Translations under genes and position numbers: made by a program
Notes under the pieces: model-generated
The model's input: the letters and a program-made list of their open reading frames with translations, nothing else
What the model was told of the DNA's origin: nothing
The model's database searches: none
Part shown: in pieces, positions 591 through 16,687 of the stretch
Numbering within the stretch: position 1 is the first letter of the stretch
Layout: each line of letters starts with the position of its first letter
Origin: Fonticula alba ATCC 38817
Taxonomy: Eukaryota > Protista > Nucleariida
Length of the DNA: 25,338 bases
Assembly: GCA_000388065.2 (NCBI GenBank)
Contig: KB932212.1
Reading direction: 5' to 3' (one strand)

Positions 591-960
591 TGCTTGCACA
601 CCCATCTGTGACGGTCGGCGCGGCGAGGTGCGGTGCCGCCCTTCCGCCTTGCCCCCGCTCCTCGGGCACGCCCATTGGTTGGCCGGGCAATATTTCAAGC
701 CCTGCGCCCATCCCGTGCCGCGCCCCGGGCGCATTGTTGTTGACTCACCGCGGTGCCCGGGGGCCGCGCGCGCCCCCTTTCGGCGTGCCCAGGCCCAAGC
801 CGACCGTATGCGCGCCCGTGCGCCGCCCACACCCACACATTGCACCCCTTCTGTCGCCGTCCCCCTCGGCCCCAAGAAGCAACCGGCGAAGGCGCTGGCC
901 GGCTGGCTGCTGGCTGGCCGGCTGGCGTGTGCCCCTGCCGGGCCTCTGCGACGGCCGATC

Positions 961-993
<33 letters not shown>

Positions 994-1053
994 CGGCGGC
1001 CCGGGGGCCCGCCCCCCCCCGCCCCCGCGGGGGCCCCCCCCCCCCCCCCGGCC

Positions 1054-1094
<41 letters not shown>

Positions 1095-1096
1095 CG

Positions 1097-1129
<33 letters not shown>

Positions 1130-1142
1130 GGGGGGGCGATCG

Positions 1143-1195
<53 letters not shown>

Positions 1196-1196: not shown

Positions 1197-1379
1197 CCTG
1201 CTCCCCTCTCCCGCACCCACGCACCCACACGCACGCGCGCGCGTCTCCCTGGCCCTCCTGCCCCGGCACTACTTCCTCCTCTCGCGGCCGCCGCCTCCCC
1301 CTCCCCCCGCTCCCGGCTCCTCGCTCCCCGCCCCCCGCGGACCCCGGCGCACGCGCGCACAGAGCACCCCGCCCGCATC

Positions 1380-1497
1380 ATGGGCGACTCGGCCGTCCTC
1401 GAGCTGGCACAGTGCTTCCCCGACACGGATCGCTCCCTCCTTGAGCGGATCTATGACTTCAACAATCGCGATGTCGGTGCGTCCGCTCCCCTGCCCT

Positions 1498-1549
<52 letters not shown>

Positions 1550-1630
1550 CGCGCACTGACACCCCCCCACCCGCCGCCCCAGGCATGACCAAGTCCGCCC
1601 TGTCGAAGATGCTCCGCCGTGCTTCCAACG
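1380..1630 (+). other. CUE/UBA-like ubiquitin-binding domain (exons 1-2 of gene 1)
   Basis: Spliced translation MGDSAVLELAQCFPDTDRSLLERIYDFNNRDVGMTKSALSKML fits the CUE pattern (L..xFP..d..l...l......v..a...l): FP motif and three-helix length. Confidence 0.65.
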
Positions 1631-2936
1631 GTGCGCCGCAACCTCCGTGCCCTTCGCGCGCGCCCCCCCNNNNNNNNNNNNNNNNNNNNNNNNNNNNNNN
1701 NNNNNNNNNNNNNNNNNNNNNNNNNNNNNNNNNNNNNNNNNNNNNNNNNNNNNNNNNNNNNNNNNNNNNNNNNNNNNNNNNNNNNNNNNNNNNNNNNNNN
1801 NNNNNNNNNNNNNNNNNNNNNNNNNNNNNNNNNNNNNNNNNNNNNNNNNNNNNNNNNNNNNNNNNNNNNNNNNNNNNNNNNNNNNNNNNNNNNNNNNNNN
1901 NNNNNNNNNNNNNNNNNNNNNNNNNNNNNNNNNNNNNNNNNNNNNNNNNNNNNNNNNNNNNNNNNNNNNNNNNNNNNNNNNNNNNNNNNNNNNNNNNNNN
2001 NNNNNNNNNNNNNNNNNNNNNNNNNNNNNNNNNNNNNNNNNNNNNNNNNNNNNNNNNNNNNNNNNNNNNNNNNNNNNNNNNNNNNNNNNNNNNNNNNNNN
2101 NNNNNNNNNNNNNNNNCCCCCCCCCCCGCTGCCAGCCCCCACGCCGGAGCCGGCCTCCGAGCCGCGGGACAGCCTCGACCTCCTGAAGCGCCTGGAGACC
2201 TTCCGCCGGAGCTCGCTCGCCGCCCTGCCCGCCACCGACGCCACGGCCACCCCCCTCCTGCCGCCGGCGCTCATCTCCTCCGAGGGCCTCTCCTCGCTGG
2301 ACATGATGGCCGCCGGCCGGGTGGGCGTGCAGCTGTCCGCCGCCGACCTCGGGCTGGACCCCCGCGTCCAGGGGTACTCGCCGGGCGCCGACGCCGCGCA
2401 CATCCTCACCTGCCTGCACCGGCTGCTGGTGTCGCCGCTGGCGCACTCCGTCAGCCTGGACGTCCCGTGGAATGACACGCGCCTGATCCTGGCCCTGACC
2501 GAGCTGCCGGCCCTGCTGGCGGCCGAGGGCGACGCCGCGCCGCCCATCGACCCGGGCATGCTGTCCAGCCGGCTCTTCCTCAGCCTGTCCTTCTGCCGGC
2601 GTGATGGGTCCTTCCATGAGCTGCCGCTCCCCTCGGATCCGACGCAATTTGCCCCGATCTGCTTCTCGCTGCCCTCCATCCGCAACCACTTCCTCCACTG
2701 CGTGCGGGTCCTGGCCAGCATCCGCCCGGCCCGGCTGCTGCTCGGCACCTGCGTCAACGCCCTGTTCAAGGTCCAGGAGACCCAGCTCGGGCACTTCGGC
2801 CCGCTCTACTTCGAGGCGTCCATCCAGGCCAAGCACTACTCCCCGCGCTCGCGCGTGTCCCTGAACCTTTCCTATGAGGTTCGTCGCACCCGTTCTCTCT
2901 CTCCCTCTCCCTCCCTCTCTCTCTCTCTCTCTCTCT

Positions 2937-2974
<38 letters not shown>

Positions 2975-4412
2975 TCTCACTCTTCTCACTCTCTCTCTCT
3001 TCTCTCTTCTCACTCTCTCTCTTTTCTCACTCTCCCTCTCTTCTCACCCTCCCTCTCTTCTCACCCTCTCTTTTCTTTCTCTCCCTCTCTTTTCTTTCTC
3101 TCCCTCTCTCCCGTCGCATGCCCTTGTCTGGATGCTGCCCGCTCTCTGTCGTGTATGCTCATGATGCCCCCCCCCCCCCCACACACAGCACCTCCACCGG
3201 AATGCCAACCAATACACCGAGGTGTTGCACGCGGCCGGCGACAAGCTGGACTTCCTGTCCATCACCTCGGTCCCCAGCGACTTCGTGGCCAATGTGGCCG
3301 AGATCCCGGCCGACTACTACCACATGCTGGCCAACCTGGCGTCCAGCGAGGATGACATGGTGCTCAACATCGGCTGGTCCTCGGACAATGACGCGTCGTC
3401 GCACTTCCCCGCCCGGCCGGACGCCACGGCCCAGGATGGCTTCGAGGAGCAGGTGGCCTTCATCTATGCCCTGCCGCGGCTCCTCAGCGAGGCATGCCCC
3501 AACTACACCATGTGGTACGGTCTGCATGATCAGCTCCCGGAGCAGAGCGGCCTCGGGCTCTTCGTCACCCCGCCGGCCGTGGCCCAGCAGCCATCGACGC
3601 CCGGGCTCGGGGAACTCCAGCTCCTGAATGCCCGCCACGCCAAGCCCATCTACCACCTGTGGGTCCTGGTCCGGGTGTCGAACGACCGGCGCCTCGACGC
3701 GCTGGAGGCCACCACCGGTGCGGCGGCCGAATCGCCCCAGCTGGCCCCCCTGTCGCTGGTCGCCGCCGCCGCCGCCGCCGCCGCTCCGGTGCCCGGGGCC
3801 ATCCCGTCCCCCCCTCCGCCGTCGGTCGCGGTCGCCGACCCGCCGGTATGTATCGTGCTGCCACCGTGCTGGTTCTTCTCCTTCCCCTCTGCCTGCTCTC
3901 TCTCTCTCTCTCTCTCTCTCTCCCCCCAGCTAACTGGAGCTCCTGCCCATCCCCCCCCCACCCCCGCTCCCCCGTTCTCTCCCTGATACCAGGTGGCCAG
4001 CCTGCCACCCAAGCTGTCTGGCCCGCCGCCGGCTGACTCCCAGTCGCTCTCGGAGCAGCAGGCCCAGCAGTTCCGGCTGATGCAGGCCGGCCTCGCTGGT
4101 CCGGCCGCCACCGGGCCGGGCCTCCCTCAGGTCCCGCTGCCGCCACCGGCTTCGCCCATGCCGCCCAAGCCCGGCGCCATGGCCGCACCCCTGTCGCCAT
4201 CGATTCCCTCCCCCCTGGCGCCCTCCTCCCTGCCGGACATGGACCTCCTGCGTGAGCGCATCCAAGCCCAGTACCTCACCCGGCAGCGGGCCGCCGAGCA
4301 GCATGCCGCCGAGTCCGCCTCGGTGCCGGCCCAGCCGCAGGTCCCGGCGCAGCTGCACGCCCTGCCGCCGCCGGCGCAGCAGCATTCCTTCCCCCCGCCA
4401 CAGCACCTCCAG

Positions 4413-4444
<32 letters not shown>

Positions 4445-6536
4445 CCACCACCACCACCACCACCAGCACCATCATCATCTTCACCAGCACCAGCACCAGC
4501 ACCAGCAGCAGGTCCCCCTGCCGCCGGCACACATGATGCTGGCTCCGCCGCCACCGCCCGTGGCCGCCGGTGCTGGCGCGGCCCCCCCCCCGGCCAAGCT
4601 CTCCCCCCCGGCCACGCCGCCCATGATCTCGGTCACCAGCACCCCGATGGTGACCACCACCCCGTCCACCATCCTTCCCCTGCCTCCGGGGCTGGTCCCC
4701 TCGTCGGCCCCGCTGACCCCTTCGGCCCGGCACATCCAGCAGCCGGTGGCCCTGAACGAGGTTGAGGGGTGGCTGATCGCCCGGATCTCGGCCTCCATCC
4801 GCGGGTCCCTGGACCTGACCCCCAACTCCAAGAACATCCTGCAGTATGACCATCACCTGTCCGGGCTGACCGGCACCGGGTCCGGCCGCCTGTGGCAGAT
4901 GCTCTCCGAGACGGGCATGGTACGTGGCGCCTGCGTCCGCCCCCCCNNNNNNNNNNNNNNNNNNNNNNNNNNNNNNNNNNNNNNNNNNNNNNNNNNCCCC
5001 CCCCCCCCCCCCCCCCCCTCGCAGCCGGACATCATCTGCGCCACCATCACCTACCAGGTGACACAGCACATCCTCCGGAGCGGCTGCCTCCGGGGCGGGC
5101 TGCCCCTCAATGGGGTCGAGCTCTTCGAGGCGGCCGACATCGCCCGGGTCACCCAGCCGCTGATCTTCCCGGTGGCCGAGCTCATCCTCGGGCACCAGCC
5201 CACCATGGACCGCCTGCGCCGGCGGGTCATGATCGACAAGATGGTCAAGAATGACTCGCTCTCCGGGCCGCCGAATACCACCTCCCGGTCGCATCGGGAC
5301 CCGGCCGCGCGCGGGGTCGATGGGACTCGCATTTTCCACGAGATCGCCGAGGACCAGGGCCCGCGCGCCAGCATGGAGGACCGGCTAATTGCCCTGCCCT
5401 ATGTGAATGAGCTCTTCGGGCTGTCGCTGCCCCAGCGGCTGTCCTTCTATGCGGTGCTCGATGGCCATGGCGGCCGGCGGGTGGCCGACTACGCCACCGA
5501 GCTCCTGCCGGTCCACATCTTCCGGTCGCCGGTGCTCGGCGAGAGCCTGGAGCAGGCCATCCGCGGGGGCATCCATTCGACCAACGAAAATTGGAAGGGC
5601 AAGGTGGCCCGCGAGTCGATGGTCGTCCCGCCGAAGGCGGTCAACTCCCTGCGCGGGGCCGGGGCCACCCTGGCCGCGGCGCTGGTGGTCGACTCGGCCG
5701 AGGTCATCGTCGCCTGGGTCGGCGACTCGCAGGTGGCCCTCTTCTCGCCGTACCAGTGCCCGGCCACGGTGGCCGCCCCGGCCGGCCTGCTGGAGGACCC
5801 CCTCCCGGCATACACCCCGCACATTGAGCCGCTGCAAGTGGTGGCCCCCCACCGGGCCAGCGACCCGGCCGAGCAGGATGCCGTCGTGGCCCGCGGCGGC
5901 TTCGTGTCCATGGTCGGCGAAACGGCCCGCGTCAATGGGATCCTGGCCGTGCCGCGGGCCATCGGCGATGTCCAGCTCCACAGTGTCATCACCTGCGACC
6001 CGACCATTCGCACGGTGCGCCTCGGGGCGTCCCCCTTCCGCGGGGGCGCCGGGGCCGGCTCCGCCGACGGGGGGGCCTCCGGCTCCCCCGCCTCCCCGGC
6101 CCCGGCCGCCGCCGCCGCCGGCGCCACCACCTCCACCACCCCACCCGGCACCATGGCCGGTTCCTCCTCCTCCTCCGCCGCCGCCGCCGGCGCCGGCGCC
6201 ACCTCGCGCCACCACCACCCGTCGCTGGTTTTGACCCCGCAGCATCCGCTGCTGGGAGGCCACTCGCCGATGGATGACGCCGGCGATGGGGTGCTCTCGC
6301 CGGACACGCCCCGGGCGCCGGGCGCCGGCCCGGAGCCCGAGAACCGGATTCTCGTGGTCCTGGCCTGCGATGGGCTCTTCGACACGCTGACCCCGGCCGA
6401 GTGTGCGCCGCTCATCGGCGACCACCTGGGCCGGAACTTCGGCTCGGCGCAGGGCCTGGCCGTGGCGCTGACCCGCTTCGCCCGGGCCTCCGGCTCGACG
6501 GACAACGTCTCGGTGCAGGTTCTGGAGTTCAGTTGA
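1380..6536 (+). CDS. Multidomain PP2C (PPM-family) phosphatase: CUE-like domain, inactive GH-like TIM barrel, Pro/Gln/His-rich linker and PPM1E/F-like catalytic domain, ~1327 aa, 6 exons
   Basis: Exons 1380-1476, 1583-1630, 2136-2878, 3189-3845, 3993-4919, 5025-6536 (TGA). All junctions are GT..AG and phase-compatible (1,1,0,0,0); total 3984 nt. PP2C motifs: QGPRASMEDR, YAVLDGHGG, AWVGDS, GILAVPRAIGD, LACDGLFD, GSTDNVSV. Extra exons could be hidden in the gap at 1670-2116. Confidence 0.9.
1670..2116. other. Assembly gap (447 N) inside intron 2 of gene 1
   Basis: N run flanked by poly-C. Confidence 1.
2320..3540 (+). other. Glycoside hydrolase clan GH-A-like (beta/alpha)8 barrel, probably catalytically dead (exons 3-4 of gene 1)
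   Basis: Alternating strand/helix pattern with motifs in the order seen in prokaryotic GH-A/GH53-like proteins: FSLPSIRNHF, LLLGTCVN, K..SPRSRVSLNLSYE, LDFLSITSVPS, EIPADYY, VLNIGWSS, EEQVAFI, WYGLHD. Recognised from memory of the family; no HMM was run. Confidence 0.6.
2893..3110 (+). repeat. Degenerate (CT)n polypyrimidine microsatellite in intron 3 of gene 1
   Basis: About 220 bp of almost pure C/T inside intron 2879-3188. Confidence 0.9.
4405..4510 (+). repeat. CAG/CAC trinucleotide repeat encoding a poly-Gln/poly-His tract
   Basis: Translation HLQQHQQQQQQQQHHHHHHHQHHHHLHQHQHQHQQQ in exon 5 of gene 1. Confidence 0.9.
4947..4996. other. Assembly gap (50 N) inside intron 5 of gene 1
   Basis: N run flanked by poly-C, between donor GTACGT at 4920 and acceptor AG at 5023-5024. 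Confidence 1.
5330..6533 (+). other. PP2C catalytic domain, PPM1E/PPM1F (POPX/CaMKP)-like
   Basis: MEDRLIALPYVNELFGL followed by YAVLDGHGG resembles the PPM1F segment MEDRHVSLPSFNQLFGL...AVFDGHGG. Metal-binding acidic residues are present in MED, DGH, CDG and TDN. Confidence 0.85.
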
Positions 6537-6940
6537 TTCTGTGTGTGTGCGCGCGCACCATCGCGCCATTGCCGCTGCAGGTGCCACCACCGTGCTTTGT
6601 GCGCCCTGCCCGGCTCTCTCCCGCCCCACCGGCGTGTGTCCCCTGTCCTTGTATCCGATCTCCCTCCCCCCCCCCTCATTATGTAATAATACGAAACCCC
6701 TCTTCATGTCTGTCCCCCCTCGCCCCCCGGCCTCCCTGTGTGGTGGCATGTGCGCATGCGCCGCCTCAATGGCCTTCATTTGAGAGCATATTCCTTCCGT
6801 GGCCTTCCTCTCCCAGGGACAGGCGGGCTGGAGGGAGAGGGAGAGAGAGAAAGAGCAACAGAGGGGGGTCTATTGTTATGCACACAAGGTCGAGAGGGGA
6901 AGGGGCGGATCGGACAAACAAGCACATGGCCCATCTCGCT

Positions 6941-12595: not shown

Positions 12596-13010
12596 CTCGC
12601 GCCACCACACACACATACACACACATACACATACACACACATACACATACACACATATGCCCATGCGCCGGTCCGTGCAGCTGTCGCAGGACCATGCGCT
12701 GGCGCGCTGGGAGGCCCGGTGTGCCGGGCGGCCGGGCCCCCCGCCGCCCGGGGCCGACTCGCCGGCGGCCCGTGCCGCCCCGGCCCTGCGCGTGGCCTTC
12801 CTGGCCGAGGAGCTGGTCGTGCGGCAGTGCGGCGACCGGGTCTTCGCCCCGGGGGGGCCTGACCAGCCCCTGGTCGCGCACTGCCTCAGCTCCAAGACCG
12901 CCGGCTCCAAGGCCGCGTCCCTCGCCCGGCATGGCCTGTGGACGGTGCCGCCGGCCGGGGCGCGCACCTCGCGCGGCAGCTCCGACACGGGGCCACACCG
13001 CCCGCCCTGA
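10774..13010 (+). CDS. Nucleotide-diphospho-sugar transferase (PF03407, GT77-like glycosyltransferase), ~549 aa, N-terminal signal peptide or anchor
   Basis: Exons 10774-11194, 11334-11822, 11979-12388, 12681-13010 (TGA), phases 1,1,0; total 1650 nt. Motifs: VTEAFLDVADNWL, LWAVRMGLLQLLLECGLDVLHSDLDAVWL (DxD), SRGTFP..V..LLGVTGCMGF, FDDQAALNRML, VAHCLSSKTAGSKAASLARHGLW. N-terminus MLCLVLALLAAVLARAAAQ is hydrophobic. Confidence 0.82.
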
Positions 13011-13037
13011 TGCACTTGGCCCTGGCGCGCCTTCCGC

Positions 13038-13127
13038 NNNNNNNNNNNNNNNNNNNNNNNNNNNNNNNNNNNNNNNNNNNNNNNNNNNNNNNNNNNNNNN
13101 NNNNNNNNNNNNNNNNNNNNNNNNNNN
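13038..13127. other. Assembly gap (90 N) between the convergent GT and GDE 3' ends
   Basis: N run followed by poly-C. Confidence 1.
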
Positions 13128-13271
13128 CCCCCCCCCCCGGAGGGCGCAGGCAAGAAGACAAGGGTGGCTGGCGTACGCCCGGCGGCCGGACCGGCACAGC
13201 AGGGCCACAGCGCGGGCGAATGCCCAGCCAGGCGTGGGGCATTTCTAGTGCGCCGTGCGCGCTCGCGCGCC

Positions 13272-14062
13272 TCACCAGTAGGTCATGTGCAGCCCGGCGC
13301 CCCAGGCCTCCATCGAGGCCTCCAGCGCCAGGGCCGAGCTCCAGGCCTGGGTCGGGCAGGAGAGCGGCGTGGCCGGATGGCCGGACAGGTTGGTCAGCTC
13401 CGGCAGCCCGTGCCAGCGCCAGTCGGTCTGCAGGGCCCCGGCCGCGGCGGCCGGGCTGTGGTCCTCGGTCGGCGGGATGAACATGTGCGCCCGGTGGCTG
13501 CGCATGATGAGCGTGCGCCGCGCGCGACGGAACTGCCCCGCGCGCCGGGGACGGGGGGGGGGGGCGGCGAGGCGGATCACCAAGGGGGAACACCTGGTCA
13601 GTACATGGCGCGTGGGGGGGGCGGCGTGCGCGCGTGGGTCCCTCCGCCCGGGGTGGGGGGACACCCCCGGCGGCCGGGGCGCACGTACCGAGCGCGAGAG
13701 GTTCAGCGCGGCCGTCTCGTCGATGGCCTGCGCGCAGTCGGTCCCGGTGTAGCCGGCGCGCAGCTGGCCCACCAGGTCCGCGCGCGAGAGGCCGAACTGC
13801 CCGAGGTGCGCGTCCTCCTCGGCCGGGGTGGTGGCCTCGAAGCCAGACGACGAGCCGGACGGCGAGAGCCCCGACTCCCCGGGCAGGTACATGCGGATGG
13901 CGCGCTGCACCGGGCTCGAGATGCGCCGGTTCTTGCCCGCGTGCGAGGGGGCCACCAGGACCGGGTCGAACTTGATGGCCGACAGCCAGAAGAAGCCGGT
14001 GGGCCAGAGCCACTCCTGCGTGTGTGTGTGTGTGTGTGTGTGCGTGTGTGTGTGCATGTGCA

Positions 14063-14093
<31 letters not shown>

Positions 14094-16687
14094 GTGTGCG
14101 TGTGCATGTGCATGTGCATGTGCATGTGCGTGTGCGTGTGCATGTGCATGTGCATGTGCGTGTGCGTGTGCATGTGCATGTGCGTGTGCGTGTGCGTGTG
14201 TGTGAGTTTCGGTTGCGTGTGTGGGGTGGTCGGTCACGCGTGCATCGGTGCGAGAAAGTGCCGCGCGCGCGGGGGGGGGGGCGGCCGCGAAAGAGGGGAA
14301 AAGAACACCCGAGAGGCGCCCTGCCGGGCCACAGCCCAGGCCAGGCACCAGGCCGAGGGGGGGGGGGGGGGGGAAAAAGGACCGGAAGAAAGCCCGGCGC
14401 CGGGACACGCACCGGACCCTGGTGATAGTTGAAGCCCCCGTCGACGAAGGGGTCCCCGGTGGCCCCCTCGCTGCCCAGGTAGAAGGGCCGGAAGCGCCAG
14501 TCGGCCGGGTCCAGCGTGCGCATGCCGGTGCCCGACCGGAGGATCCACTGGTCGTGGGTGTAGGCGCCGGATTGGATGCGCGCGGCGCGGGCGGCCTCGC
14601 CCCGGCCGCGGGTGCTGGCCGCCAGCGCCGCCGCCGTCTGGGCATTGAGGCTGGTCGGCTGGCCGGGCTTCGGCCGGAGGATGGCCGCCGTGGCATTCAG
14701 CCCGACCAGCGCGTGATTCGGCTGGAAGAGGTCCGGCGCCACGGCCATGGCCACCGACACATTGGGCCGGAGCTGGTAATCGCCCCAGCCATCGCACGAG
14801 CCGAAGGTGTCCTTGTAGATGCCCCGCCGGTGGACAAACCGCGCGTCCACCATGTACGCCCCGTCGTCCGCCGGCTCGGCCGGCACCCAGAAGCACGCCT
14901 CGAAGGTCACCTCCAGCAGCCGGCACCACTCCACGAAGGGCACCCACAGCCAGCGCCCCTGCAGCGGGCACCGGTCCGGGTCTTCCGAGCTGCCGGTGGT
15001 GTCGATCCGGCCGATGCCCGGCGGGCCGGCCGCCAGCGGCGGCGGCGTGGTCGGCGGCGTGGCCGTGGGCGCCATGCCGCCGCCCAGCGACCCGGTCGCG
15101 CTGGCCGGCGGCCCGATCGGCACGCGCTCCGCATGCCAGGTGGCCGGGTTGTCGGTCAGGTCGTCCGCGACCCCGGCCGCCCGGCGGCCCTCCTCCCACA
15201 GTCGGCGGACATTGGACGGGACCCAGCCGGCCAGCGGCGGCGGCGGCGACGGCGGCGGCGCCAGTGACGCCGACCCCGGGGCCGGCATGCCCACGCCCGG
15301 GGCATGGCCCTCGGCCGGGCGGGCCTTCTTGTCGGCTGGCCGGCCGCCGCCGTCATCCCCCCGGCCGGCATCCTGGCCCGGGGCCCGGCCCTCCTGCCAC
15401 AGGTCCTGGTACTCGGCGGTCGACCGCCAGCGCCGGGCCCCGAGGAGCTGGTGCCGGCGCCAGGCGGCCGGCGGCTGCCACTCGCCCGGCAGCGCCTCCA
15501 GCCGGCCGAGGATGTTGTCCACGCGCAATTGCACCGGCTCCGGCAGCGGCCGGGCCAGGGCCGCGGGCAGCCCGGCGGCCAGGGCCGCCTCCGGCCGGAC
15601 CACGCACGCCGGCACGCCATCCACCCGGATGGCCCCGCACCGGTGGGCAAAGGCCAGGAACCGCAGGGTGGCATACGACAAGCCGGCCAGCTCGATGGCG
15701 GCCCCGTCGCGCGGGGTGGCCGGCACCCCGCGCGTGCCCCACCGCGCCGACTCGCCCATCTTGTCCATCCAGGTCCCGGCGTTGAGGCGATTCCCGCCGG
15801 CCACCAGCCCGGTGCGCCAGTCGACATACGCCTCGACATTGAAGCCGGGCCCGTGCATCCGGTCGTCGATCTGGCCACCGGCGCGGCGCTCCCGGAATTG
15901 GATGGTCCCGGCCGCATGCCGGGTCACGATCTCCACCAGGATCTCCCCCAGGGGGGTGGGCTCCGGGGCCAGGCGCGCGCCCTCCGGCCAGTCCGGGTCC
16001 AGGTCGTCATCGGCGAAGCGCCGCCACACCCGCCACCCGAGCACCTCCCGGGCGGCGCGCTGCAGGAAGGGCACCCGCCCGGCCGGGCCCAGCCCATGCC
16101 AGCTGCTTTCCAGGGCCCGGAGGAAGGACGCGTCCAGCCCCGGGCCCCGGGGCTCGGCGCCCGGCCCCGCGGACAGGCTCCCCTGCCAGTGCATGAGCAG
16201 GGCCCGGGCCACGACCGTCTGCGACACGGCGTACGGCAGCCACCAGGAGGCATCGCGGCAGTTGTACCGCGGCCGGCGGCCGCCATCCGCCAGGTTGGGG
16301 ATCAGCCCGTGCCGCAGGAGCGACGCGATGGCCAGCAGGTGATCGCGCGCCGCGCGCATGCGGCCCAGCAGCAGCAGCAGCCCGCGGAAGGCTGCCACCG
16401 GCGCGCCGCGCCCCATGGCCCCCGGCGTAAAGGGTGCCCCCGTGCCCCATGGCGTGCCATGCTGATGGTCAGTCTCGCGTCGGGGCCTTCACATGTGTGC
16501 GATTGTGCGAGTGCGCGCGATTGTGGCCCGGTGTGCTTGTGTGTGTGCGCGCGCGAGCGGTCAACGAGCCACGCCCCTCCAAACGAGGCGTGCTGCATGG
16601 GCGCGTCCGTTTGTCCTGGCGCGCCCAGCAAAAGACGAGCACACAGGCCCCGATGCGCGTTCGGCCGTCTGTACATATGTACACCGG

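What the first reader, a model, noticed from the sequence alone, without database searches (positions are those of the whole stretch)
1380..6536. Unusual fusion: CUE domain, glycoside-hydrolase-like barrel and PP2C phosphatase in one polypeptide
Seen: six exons splice in phase into one 1327-aa ORF joining a CUE-like N-terminus, a ~400-aa alpha/beta domain, a long low-complexity linker and an intact PP2C. Established: CUE domains bind ubiquitin, and PPM1E/F-type PP2Cs dephosphorylate CaMK/PAK/AMPK-type kinases. I know of no PP2C carrying a GH-type TIM barrel. Inference: a signalling phosphatase that could integrate a carbohydrate ligand and ubiquitin, possibly a previously undescribed glycan-sensing module.
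Basis: partly seen in the sequence, partly recalled or inferred. Interest (0 to 1): 0.85.

Follow-up and report, generated by a model that had tools for sequence, protein, structure and literature searches.

The report
Phosphatase fused to a dead sugar-cutting barrel
This amoeba-like relative of fungi makes one long, spliced messenger RNA for a working-looking protein phosphatase joined to a bacterial-type sugar-cutting enzyme domain that has lost both cutting residues, a combination found nowhere else in the searches run here and whose job is untested.

Summary
Six GT..AG exons (1380-1476, 1583-1630, 2136-2878, 3189-3845, 3993-4919, 5025-6536) give one 1327-aa ORF. Both assembly gaps lie inside introns. 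RNA contigs from four runs join 2878/3189, 3845/3993 and 4919/5025. Contig lengths and word shares fit exons 1-3 with no hidden exon. The only contig break is in a CAG/CAC array (4401-4517).

The C-terminus is an intact PP2C, nearest to animal PPM1F/PPM1E (30-35% identity).

Residues ~110-460 are homologous to an unnamed bacterial family (hhalign 94% and 98%). A member of that family models as a clan GH-A TIM barrel, nearest GH5_18, GH53 and GH39. In the window both family-invariant glutamates are replaced (E->C254, E->N356), along with a Tyr and an Arg. It is therefore a pseudo-glycosidase, not an enzyme.

The CUE call is weak: 15 bits against a Pfam cut-off of 21.1.

No protein with barrel plus PP2C, and no eukaryotic relative of the barrel, turned up in the protein, structure, metagenome or literature searches.

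Glycan sensing remains an untested idea.

Verdict: a real gene with a new domain architecture in a known phosphatase family.

The parts
1291..1379 (+). 5' UTR (minimum extent)
   Evidence: The X2 RNA contig carries 975 nt upstream of exon 4. This reaches position 1291 if exons 1-3 are as modelled. There is no in-frame ATG upstream.
1380..1476 (+). Exon 1: start codon and aa 1-32, the CUE-like helices with the CFP motif
   Evidence: Pfam CUE at 15 bits, E 0.02, below the 21.1 cut-off. RNA word shares fit.
1583..1630 (+). Exon 2: aa 33-48, the putative third helix of the CUE-like bundle
   Evidence: AG|G and G|GT borders, in phase. The word share in run X4 (0.09) fits exon 2 plus 38 nt of exon 1.
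1631..2135 (+). Intron 2, holding assembly gap 1670-2116 flanked by poly-C
   Evidence: GT..AG. RNA contig lengths leave no room for a hidden exon. The joint itself was not seen.
2136..2878 (+). Exon 3: aa 49-296. The first half of the pseudo-GH-A barrel starts at about 2318
   Evidence: BLASTP to P0003 residues 34-217, E 2e-9. hhalign 94%, E 1e-7. The loose end in RNA contigs reads its last bases.
2750..2752 (+). Codon TGC, Cys254, at the family's invariant acid/base Glu (E175 of P0003, motif ATEIN versus GTCVN)
2879..3188 (+). Intron 3, CT-rich, splitting the barrel
   Evidence: Absent from RNA contigs. The loose end joins 2878 to 3189. TRF array at 2894-3110.
3189..3845 (+). Exon 4: aa 297-515. 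The second half of the barrel runs to about 3680, then the linker starts
   Evidence: phmmer hits P0003-P0006. BLASTP to P0003 residues 243-363, E 6e-13. hhalign 98.2%, E 3e-14. Atlas leads are GH39, GH_cc and GH79n.
3366..3368 (+). Codon AAC, Asn356, at the family's invariant nucleophile Glu (E285 of P0003, MEIGW versus LNIGW)
3846..3992 (+). Intron 4: 147 nt, in frame but carrying TGA at 3984-3986
   Evidence: Skipped in contigs of all four RNA runs, with GT..AG borders and zero depth inside.
3993..4919 (+). Exon 5: aa 516-824. A Pro/Ala/Gln/His-rich linker, then the start of an unassigned region ahead of the PP2C
   Evidence: Open frame with GC3 0.895. Covered by RNA contigs except inside the repeat.
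4401..4517 (+). CAG/CAC array encoding a poly-Gln/His tract; the only place where the RNA contigs break
   Evidence: TRF. The contigs of X2 run 39 nt in from the left and 82 nt in from the right, so they meet inside it.
4920..5024 (+). Intron 5, holding assembly gap 4947-4996 flanked by poly-C
   Evidence: Skipped in contigs of all four RNA runs, with GT..AG borders.
5025..6536 (+). Exon 6: aa 825-1327 plus the stop. Unassigned helices to about 5342, then the PP2C domain
   Evidence: Pfam PP2C E 3.9e-30. Nearest relatives are PPM1F/PPM1E. The model core has pLDDT 70-90, while the first 99 aa are below 50.
5343..6533 (+). PP2C catalytic domain, with RxxMED at 5364-5381, DGHGG at 5460-5474, and the DG and DN motifs
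   Evidence: All 26 invariant columns of the PPM1E/F alignment are kept.
6036..6335 (+). Low-complexity insert of about 100 aa inside the PP2C domain
   Evidence: No counterpart in 17 relatives. pLDDT is below 50.
6537..6675 (+). 3' UTR (approximate)
   Evidence: RNA contigs carry 960-975 nt beyond position 5700.

Best explanation
This is one gene and one roughly 4.2-kb spliced mRNA. It encodes a 1327-aa intracellular protein with no signal peptide.

Domain order:
- aa 1-48: a short CUE-like helical N-terminus
- aa ~110-460: a (beta/alpha)8 barrel of a bacterial GH-A-like family
- about 300 aa: a disordered Pro/Gln/His-rich linker
- about 160 aa: an unassigned helical stretch
- C-terminus: a catalytically intact Mg/Mn-dependent Ser/Thr phosphatase of the PPM1E/F type

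Shown here: the transcript structure, the homologies, loss of both carboxylates that the barrel's family keeps invariant, and retention of every PP2C invariant residue.

Inferred:
- The barrel no longer hydrolyses anything. It serves as a binding module that places or gates the phosphatase, in the way other dead glycosidases act as lectins or co-receptors.
- Its ligand is more likely a beta-linked sugar than a protein. Several aromatic and polar family-invariant residues survive (W160, N256, W359, W405, H409, D410).
- The barrel was most likely acquired from bacteria and then fused, because all detected relatives are bacterial.
For: Transcript:
- Joints 2878/3189, 3845/3993 and 4919/5025 appear in four RNA runs.
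- The 5' exons fit contig lengths and word shares.
- GC3 is uniformly high, and ATG 1380 is the first in-frame ATG.

Barrel:
- A full-library phmmer search finds only P0003-P0006.
- Exons 3 and 4 align in order along one P0003 domain.
- hhalign gives 94% and 98%.
- The P0003 model has pLDDT 90 and pTM 0.87.
- All top PDB, AFDB and Atlas matches are clan GH-A: GH5_18, GH53, GH39 PslG, GH1 and GH10.
- E175 and E285 are invariant in 25 of 25 bacterial members, on or just after beta-4 and beta-7. The window has C254 and N356.
- 39 of 81 conserved columns are kept.
- Family members sit in bacterial gene contexts.

PP2C.
Against: - No ligand, activity or localisation was tested.
- The barrel's own fold was inferred through a homologue, because the spliced sequence could not be handed to the structure tool.
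- Which surviving residues line the pocket was not mapped on coordinates.
- No single RNA contig crosses 4401-4517, and the 3' contig is 1.7-2 times deeper (13 versus 22-28). A shorter PP2C-only isoform may therefore coexist.
- The CUE call is below threshold.
- With one eukaryotic sequence, the direction of transfer cannot be tested.
Confidence: 0.7

Rival explanations
1. The dead barrel is a protein-protein scaffold or an intramolecular regulator of the phosphatase. It has no carbohydrate ligand at all.
For: About half of the family-conserved positions are replaced, 42 of 81. These include Y252V, R130F, T62D, Q93P and H233Y as well as both glutamates. That is more than a lectin-type pseudoenzyme would need to lose. 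The protein is intracellular, where beta-glycans are scarce.
Against: The beta-8 Trp, the GW motif after beta-7, the Asn after beta-4 and the HD pair are kept. Known dead glycosidases commonly keep sugar or ligand binding in the old pocket (my own knowledge of chi-lectins and Klotho; beta-Klotho is among the structural matches).
Confidence: 0.2
2. Two products. Besides, or instead of, the fusion, an internal start after the CAG/CAC array gives a PP2C-only protein, and the barrel part is made from a separate RNA.
For: Contigs break at 4401-4517. Depth is 13 on the 5' side and 22-28 on the 3' side in all four runs.
Against: After intron 4 is removed there is no in-frame stop between 1380 and 6534, so a 5' RNA ending in the array would have no stop codon. 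The two X2 contigs meet inside the array. k-mer assemblers break at such repeats. A depth step also fits 3' bias.
Confidence: 0.07
3. The barrel is still an enzyme that uses other residues, for example Cys254 or a substrate-assisted route, on an unknown substrate.
For: Asn256, His409 and Asp410 are kept, and a Cys sits at the acid/base place.
Against: Both carboxylates that are invariant in 25 of 25 relatives are gone, together with the invariant Tyr and Arg. No clan GH-A enzyme known to me works without the beta-7 nucleophile or a substitute acetamido group.
Confidence: 0.03

Closest known systems
Animal PPM1F / PPM1E (POPX2/POPX1, CaMK phosphatases) and C. elegans FEM-2
   Same: These are the best sequence relatives of the phosphatase domain: 30-35% identity, E down to 6e-17. 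FEM-2 (4jnd) is the best PDB sequence match. All catalytic and metal-binding motifs are shared. A non-catalytic stretch precedes the domain.
   Different: - None of them carries a TIM barrel or a CUE-like N-terminus.
- The window protein has a 100-aa low-complexity insert and a 24-aa insert inside the domain.
- Orthology was not tested by a tree.
Unnamed bacterial family of about 340-370-aa secreted-looking proteins (P0003, P0006, P0110 and at least 337 members)
   Same: These are the only sequence relatives of the barrel. The alignment is collinear over the whole domain.
   Different: - The bacterial members are single-domain (one carries a PD40 propeller) and have N-terminal hydrophobic leaders.
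- They keep E175, E285, Y252 and R130, whereas the window copy has lost all four and is buried inside a 1327-aa intracellular protein with an intron through it.
- The family has no Pfam or NCBIfam model. Ten of 25 members match GH53 below threshold.
Clan GH-A glycosidases: GH5_18 beta-mannosidases, GH53 beta-1,4-galactanases, GH39 PslG
   Same: These are the nearest solved folds to the modelled homologue (E 2e-11, TM 0.55-0.66). The glutamates sit on or just after beta-4 and beta-7 in the bacterial family.
   Different: - Sequence identity is only 13-19%.
- The family has T-E at beta-4 instead of the usual N-E.
- The window copy lacks both glutamates.
Dead glycosidases used as binding modules: alpha/beta-Klotho (GH1-like), GH18 chitinase-like lectins
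   Same: The principle is the same: a glycosidase barrel that has lost a catalytic carboxylate is reused for ligand recognition in signalling. Beta-Klotho is among the structural matches. The rest is from my own knowledge.
   Different: - Those proteins are extracellular and are not fused to a phosphatase.
- They are unrelated in sequence.
Phosphatases aimed by carbohydrate-binding modules: laforin and SEX4 (CBM plus dual-specificity phosphatase), PP1 glycogen-targeting subunits
   Same: The logic is the same: a sugar-binding module joined to, or recruiting, a phosphatase (my own knowledge).
   Different: - Those use small CBM beta-sandwiches that bind alpha-glucans, and different phosphatase folds.
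- Here the module is a whole pseudo-enzyme barrel of a beta-glycanase clan joined to a PP2C.

Membership tests
PP2C / PPM phosphatases | Match to Pfam PF00481 above the gathering score | tested here: met
   105.8 bits against a cut-off of 20.3, E 3.9e-30.
PP2C / PPM phosphatases | Metal-binding Asp residues and the phosphate-binding Arg (RxxMED, DGHGG, GDS, RAIGD, DG, DN) | tested here: met
   R114, E118, D119, D146-G150, D234, D315, D449 and N494 of the exon 6 product are all kept in the alignment with 17 relatives.
PPM1E/PPM1F (POPX/CaMKP) subfamily | Nearest relatives are PPM1E/F | tested here: met
   The named best hits are overwhelmingly PPM1F or PPM1E (E down to 6e-17). FEM-2 is the top PDB sequence match.
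PPM1E/PPM1F (POPX/CaMKP) subfamily | Orthology shown by a tree with other PP2C subfamilies, and a shared N-terminal region | not tested
   No tree was built. The 106 aa before the domain have no recognisable relative and model poorly.
Clan GH-A glycoside hydrolases | (beta/alpha)8 barrel fold | tested here: inconclusive
   Met for the homologue P0003 (pLDDT 90; all top matches are GH-A). It is carried over to the window by homology. The window's own spliced domain could not be modelled.
Clan GH-A glycoside hydrolases | Acid/base Glu after strand beta-4 | tested here: not met
   The family-invariant E175 aligns with Cys254, codon 2750-2752.
Clan GH-A glycoside hydrolases | Nucleophile Glu at the end of strand beta-7 | tested here: not met
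   The family-invariant E285 aligns with Asn356, codon 3366-3368.
A named CAZy/Pfam GH family (GH5, GH39, GH53) | Profile match above threshold | tested here: not met
   There is no Pfam hit for exons 3 or 4. Bacterial relatives reach GH53 only at 21-22 bits against a cut-off of 24. PDB sequence searches with the two window pieces and with the family profile gave nothing below E 0.6.
CUE domain (ubiquitin-binding three-helix bundle) | Match to Pfam PF02845 above the gathering score | tested here: not met
   15 bits against 21.1, E 0.02. It is the only family hit, covering profile positions 2-32 of 42.
CUE domain (ubiquitin-binding three-helix bundle) | Met-Phe-Pro motif and C-terminal di-leucine | tested here: inconclusive
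   The sequence shows Cys-Phe-Pro at aa 12-14 and Met-Leu at aa 42-43 after a three-residue longer spacing. There is no PDB sequence support.
CUE domain (ubiquitin-binding three-helix bundle) | Binds ubiquitin | not testable with these tools
   This needs a binding assay.

The most novel reading that the evidence does not exclude
An intracellular sugar-reading phosphatase. A bacterial glycosidase barrel, captured and disarmed, acts as the ligand sensor of a PPM1E/F-type phosphatase. The nearest solved folds (GH5_18) cut the Man-beta-1,4-GlcNAc core of N-glycans, and the N-terminus is CUE-like. One reading not excluded is therefore a sensor of cytosolic free or protein-bound N-glycan remnants together with ubiquitin, tying glycoprotein disposal to kinase signalling. 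That would be a new kind of input domain for PP2C phosphatases.
Probability: 0.12. Interest if true: 0.8.

Novelty: new variant of a known kind. Interest (0 to 1): 0.55.

Why it matters
PP2C phosphatases get their specificity from accessory domains, and the known set (LRR, PH, kinase-associated, cyclase and others) does not include a glycosidase-derived barrel. If the dead barrel binds a sugar, this would be a direct link between a carbohydrate signal and Ser/Thr dephosphorylation. It would use a different module and a different phosphatase fold from the laforin, SEX4 and PP1-G systems.

It is also a clean example of three things: a bacterial enzyme family appearing in a eukaryote, gaining an intron, losing its catalytic residues, and being wired into a signalling protein. 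In addition, the bacterial family itself (at least 337 members, with no Pfam or NCBIfam model) is an undescribed GH-A-like family.

The limits are plain. It is one species, no orthologue was found, and there are no functional data.

Tried and rejected
The exon 2/3 joint across gap 1 was therefore never seen directly.
- The window's own protein was not returned by any protein search, so no stored id existed for the spliced product. The barrel of the window itself, and the full-length protein, could not be modelled. A bacterial homologue served as proxy.
- Pfam gave nothing for exons 3, 4 or 5.
- PDB sequence searches with exon 3, exon 4 and the family profile gave nothing.
- The Atlas lead for exon 3 (HECT/AZUL, score 0.86, low recognition) was dropped as chance once the GH-A homology was found.
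- The 106 aa before the PP2C have no recognisable relative and model at pLDDT below 45.
- Two metagenome scans, one with exon 4 and one with the PP2C core, found no relative.
- Literature searches for Fonticula+PP2C, PP2C+glycoside hydrolase and PP2C+TIM barrel found nothing relevant.
- There are no Rfam or tRNA hits in the window.
- Bacterial contamination or misassembly was rejected. The barrel is split by a spliced GT..AG intron and lies in one RNA contig with eukaryotic exons on both sides.
- Reading intron 5 through as poly-Pro coding was rejected, because RNA skips it.
- The organism name, Fonticula alba, comes from earlier notes of this scan. It was not checked here.
Full report
**Gene model and the gaps**

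The region is about 70% G+C, with GT..AG introns rich in C and CT runs. Reading the borders by hand gives six exons: 1380-1476, 1583-1630, 2136-2878, 3189-3845, 3993-4919 and 5025-6536. They join in phase to 3984 nt, which is 1327 codons plus TGA. ATG 1380 is the first in-frame ATG after a stop at 741. Third-position G+C is 0.83-1.0 in every segment, including the low-complexity linker at 0.895.

Both assembly gaps fall inside introns and are flanked by poly-C. Gap 1670-2116 is in intron 2 and gap 4947-4996 is in intron 5. Intron 4 (147 nt) is in frame but carries TGA at 3984-3986. Without splicing, the barrel part and the phosphatase part would therefore be separate ORFs.

**RNA evidence**

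Four RNA runs of the same organism (two samples, one study) hold 0.70-0.80 of the sampled words of 2117-4946. That is the exonic share of the stretch.

The second attempt, on 3115-5700, worked. Its results were:
- In all four runs a contig skips 3846-3992, with GT..AG borders and zero depth inside.
- In all four runs a contig skips 4920-5024, again with GT..AG borders. Gap 2 is therefore not part of the mRNA.
- In all four runs the letters before 3187 read the last bases of exon 3, which gives the 2878/3189 joint.
- There were no mismatches or indels.

The contig covering exons 4 and 5 carries 975, 883, 827 and 930 nt upstream of exon 4 in runs X2, X3, X4 and X5.

| Run | nt upstream of exon 4 | Predicted word share of 1300-1669 | Observed share |
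|---|---|---|---|
| X2 | 975 | 0.49 | 0.47 |
| X3 | 883 | 0.24 | 0.25 |
| X4 | 827 | 0.08 | 0.09 |
| X5 | 930 | 0.38 | 0.41 |

The predictions assume that exons 1-3 are 97+48+743 nt with nothing hidden in gap 1. This is indirect, but it consists of four matching numbers.

The only contig break is the CAG/CAC array at 4401-4517. There the X2 contigs run 39 nt in from the left and 82 nt in from the right, so they meet inside it. The frame stays open, so an RNA ending there would lack a stop codon.

The 3' contig is 1.7-2 times deeper than the 5' contig (22-28 against 13). This may be 3' bias or an extra shorter isoform.

The 3' contigs end about 125-140 nt after the stop codon.

**The phosphatase**

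Exon 6 matches Pfam PP2C at E 3.9e-30. The best PDB sequence match is C. elegans FEM-2, 4jnd. The named best hits in the 5.8-billion-protein library are nearly all animal PPM1F or PPM1E, at 30-35% identity and E down to 6e-17.

In an alignment with 17 relatives the window sequence keeps all 26 invariant columns. These include RxxMED, DGHGG, GDS, RAIGD and DG, and it also has the nearly invariant DN asparagine. It carries two inserts of its own, about 24 and about 100 residues.

A model gives the core at pLDDT 70-90. The long insert and the first 99 residues are disordered or uncertain.

Orthology was not tested.

**The barrel**

Pfam sees nothing in exons 3 and 4. A language-model search placed exon 4 next to GH39, Glyco_hydro_cc, GH79n and DUF5722, all of clan GH-A.

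A phmmer search of exon 4 against 1.84 billion representatives found four proteins and nothing else. These are P0003, P0004, P0005 and P0006. Two of them match GH53 just under threshold.

Exon 3 aligns to P0003 residues 34-217, ending exactly at the exon's last residue. Exon 4 aligns to residues 243-363. The two exons thus encode one domain, collinear with a single bacterial domain.

P0003 belongs to a family of at least 337 proteins of about 340-370 aa. The family has no Pfam or NCBIfam model. Its members sit in ordinary bacterial gene neighbourhoods.

Profile comparison of a 25-member alignment with the window pieces gives 94% (E 1e-7) and 98.2% (E 3e-14).

AlphaFold models P0003 at pLDDT 90 and pTM 0.87, with eight strand-helix units. 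Foldseek finds only clan GH-A barrels:
- In PDB: GH5_18 beta-mannosidases, GH53 galactanases, PslG (GH39), GH1 (including the dead GH1 domains of beta-Klotho), GH113 and GH10.
- AFDB clusters give the same picture.
- The ESM Atlas gives the same picture.

**The barrel is dead**

In the bacterial family E175 (motif ATEIN, just after beta-4) and E285 (motif ME.GW, end of beta-7) are invariant in 25 of 25 members. These are the places of the acid/base and the nucleophile in clan GH-A.

The window has Cys254 (GTCVN, codon 2750-2752) and Asn356 (LNIGW, codon 3366-3368) at those places. The invariant Tyr252 and Arg130 are also replaced, by Val324 and Phe208.

In all, 39 of 81 strongly conserved columns are kept. 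The kept residues include W160, N256, W359, W405, H409 and D410.

The domain is therefore a pseudo-glycosidase. It fails two defining features of a GH-A enzyme and should not be filed as one.

**The N-terminus**

Exon 1 alone, or exons 1+2 joined, hits only Pfam CUE. The score is 15 bits (E 0.02) against a cut-off of 21.1. PDB sequences give no support.

The Cys-Phe-Pro and Met-Leu motifs resemble the Met-Phe-Pro and Leu-Leu of CUE domains. I treat the CUE reading as about even odds.

**Is the architecture known?**

No protein combining this barrel with a PP2C appeared in any of the following:
- the length-matched search with the PP2C
- the full-library search with the barrel
- the structural searches
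- two metagenome scans

No paper was found either. The window's own protein was not in the libraries, so it may be unannotated.

No eukaryotic relative of the barrel was detected at all. That makes acquisition from bacteria the simplest origin. With one eukaryotic sequence this is inference only.

**What it most likely does**

The shown facts point to a phosphatase whose N-terminal half is a non-catalytic module. My best reading, at about 0.7 for the whole package, is that the disarmed barrel is a binding domain tethered by a long flexible linker. It would place or gate a PPM1E/F-like phosphatase.

Within that reading, a sugar ligand is somewhat more likely than a protein one. The reason is that part of the old pocket signature survives.

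The rivals are a pure protein scaffold (0.2), two separate products (0.07) and residual non-canonical catalysis (0.03).

I put a specific version of it at about 0.12.

**Verdict**

This is a real, expressed gene. It is a new domain architecture within a known phosphatase family, built with a dead member of an undescribed bacterial GH-A-like family. It is interesting but confined to one species, with no functional evidence.

Noticed in passing
window 12886-16416 (-): A long ORF matches Pfam GDE_C, the amylo-alpha-1,6-glucosidase domain of glycogen debranching enzyme, at E 2e-44. It lies about 6 kb downstream of the phosphatase gene. Being next to a carbohydrate-linked phosphatase may be chance.
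   Followed up: no
window 960-1195: About 230 nt of almost pure poly-C lies just upstream of the mapped 5' end of the mRNA. Both assembly gaps in the gene (1670-2116, 4947-4996) are also flanked by poly-C runs. The gaps are therefore probably homopolymer read failures inside introns.
   Followed up: partly
P0003 family (A1; loci L001, L002): This is a bacterial family of at least 337 proteins of about 340-370 aa. It has no Pfam or NCBIfam model. A member models confidently as a clan GH-A barrel with invariant Glu after beta-4 (T-E-I-N instead of the usual N-E) and at beta-7. It looks like an undescribed glycoside hydrolase family.
   Followed up: partly
window 4401-4517: A CAG/CAC array encodes a run of about 35 Gln and His residues (QQHQQQQQQQQHHHHHHHQHHHH...). 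All four RNA assemblies break here.
   Followed up: partly
window 3115-5700: RNA contig depth steps from about 13 (exon 4 to early exon 5) to 22-28 (late exon 5 to exon 6) in all four runs. This is either 3' bias or an additional shorter transcript.
   Followed up: no
window 2894-3110: Intron 3 is a 217-nt imperfect TC/CT array with embedded 20-25-nt repeats. Part of it (3064-3114) tripped the read-laying filter.
   Followed up: no
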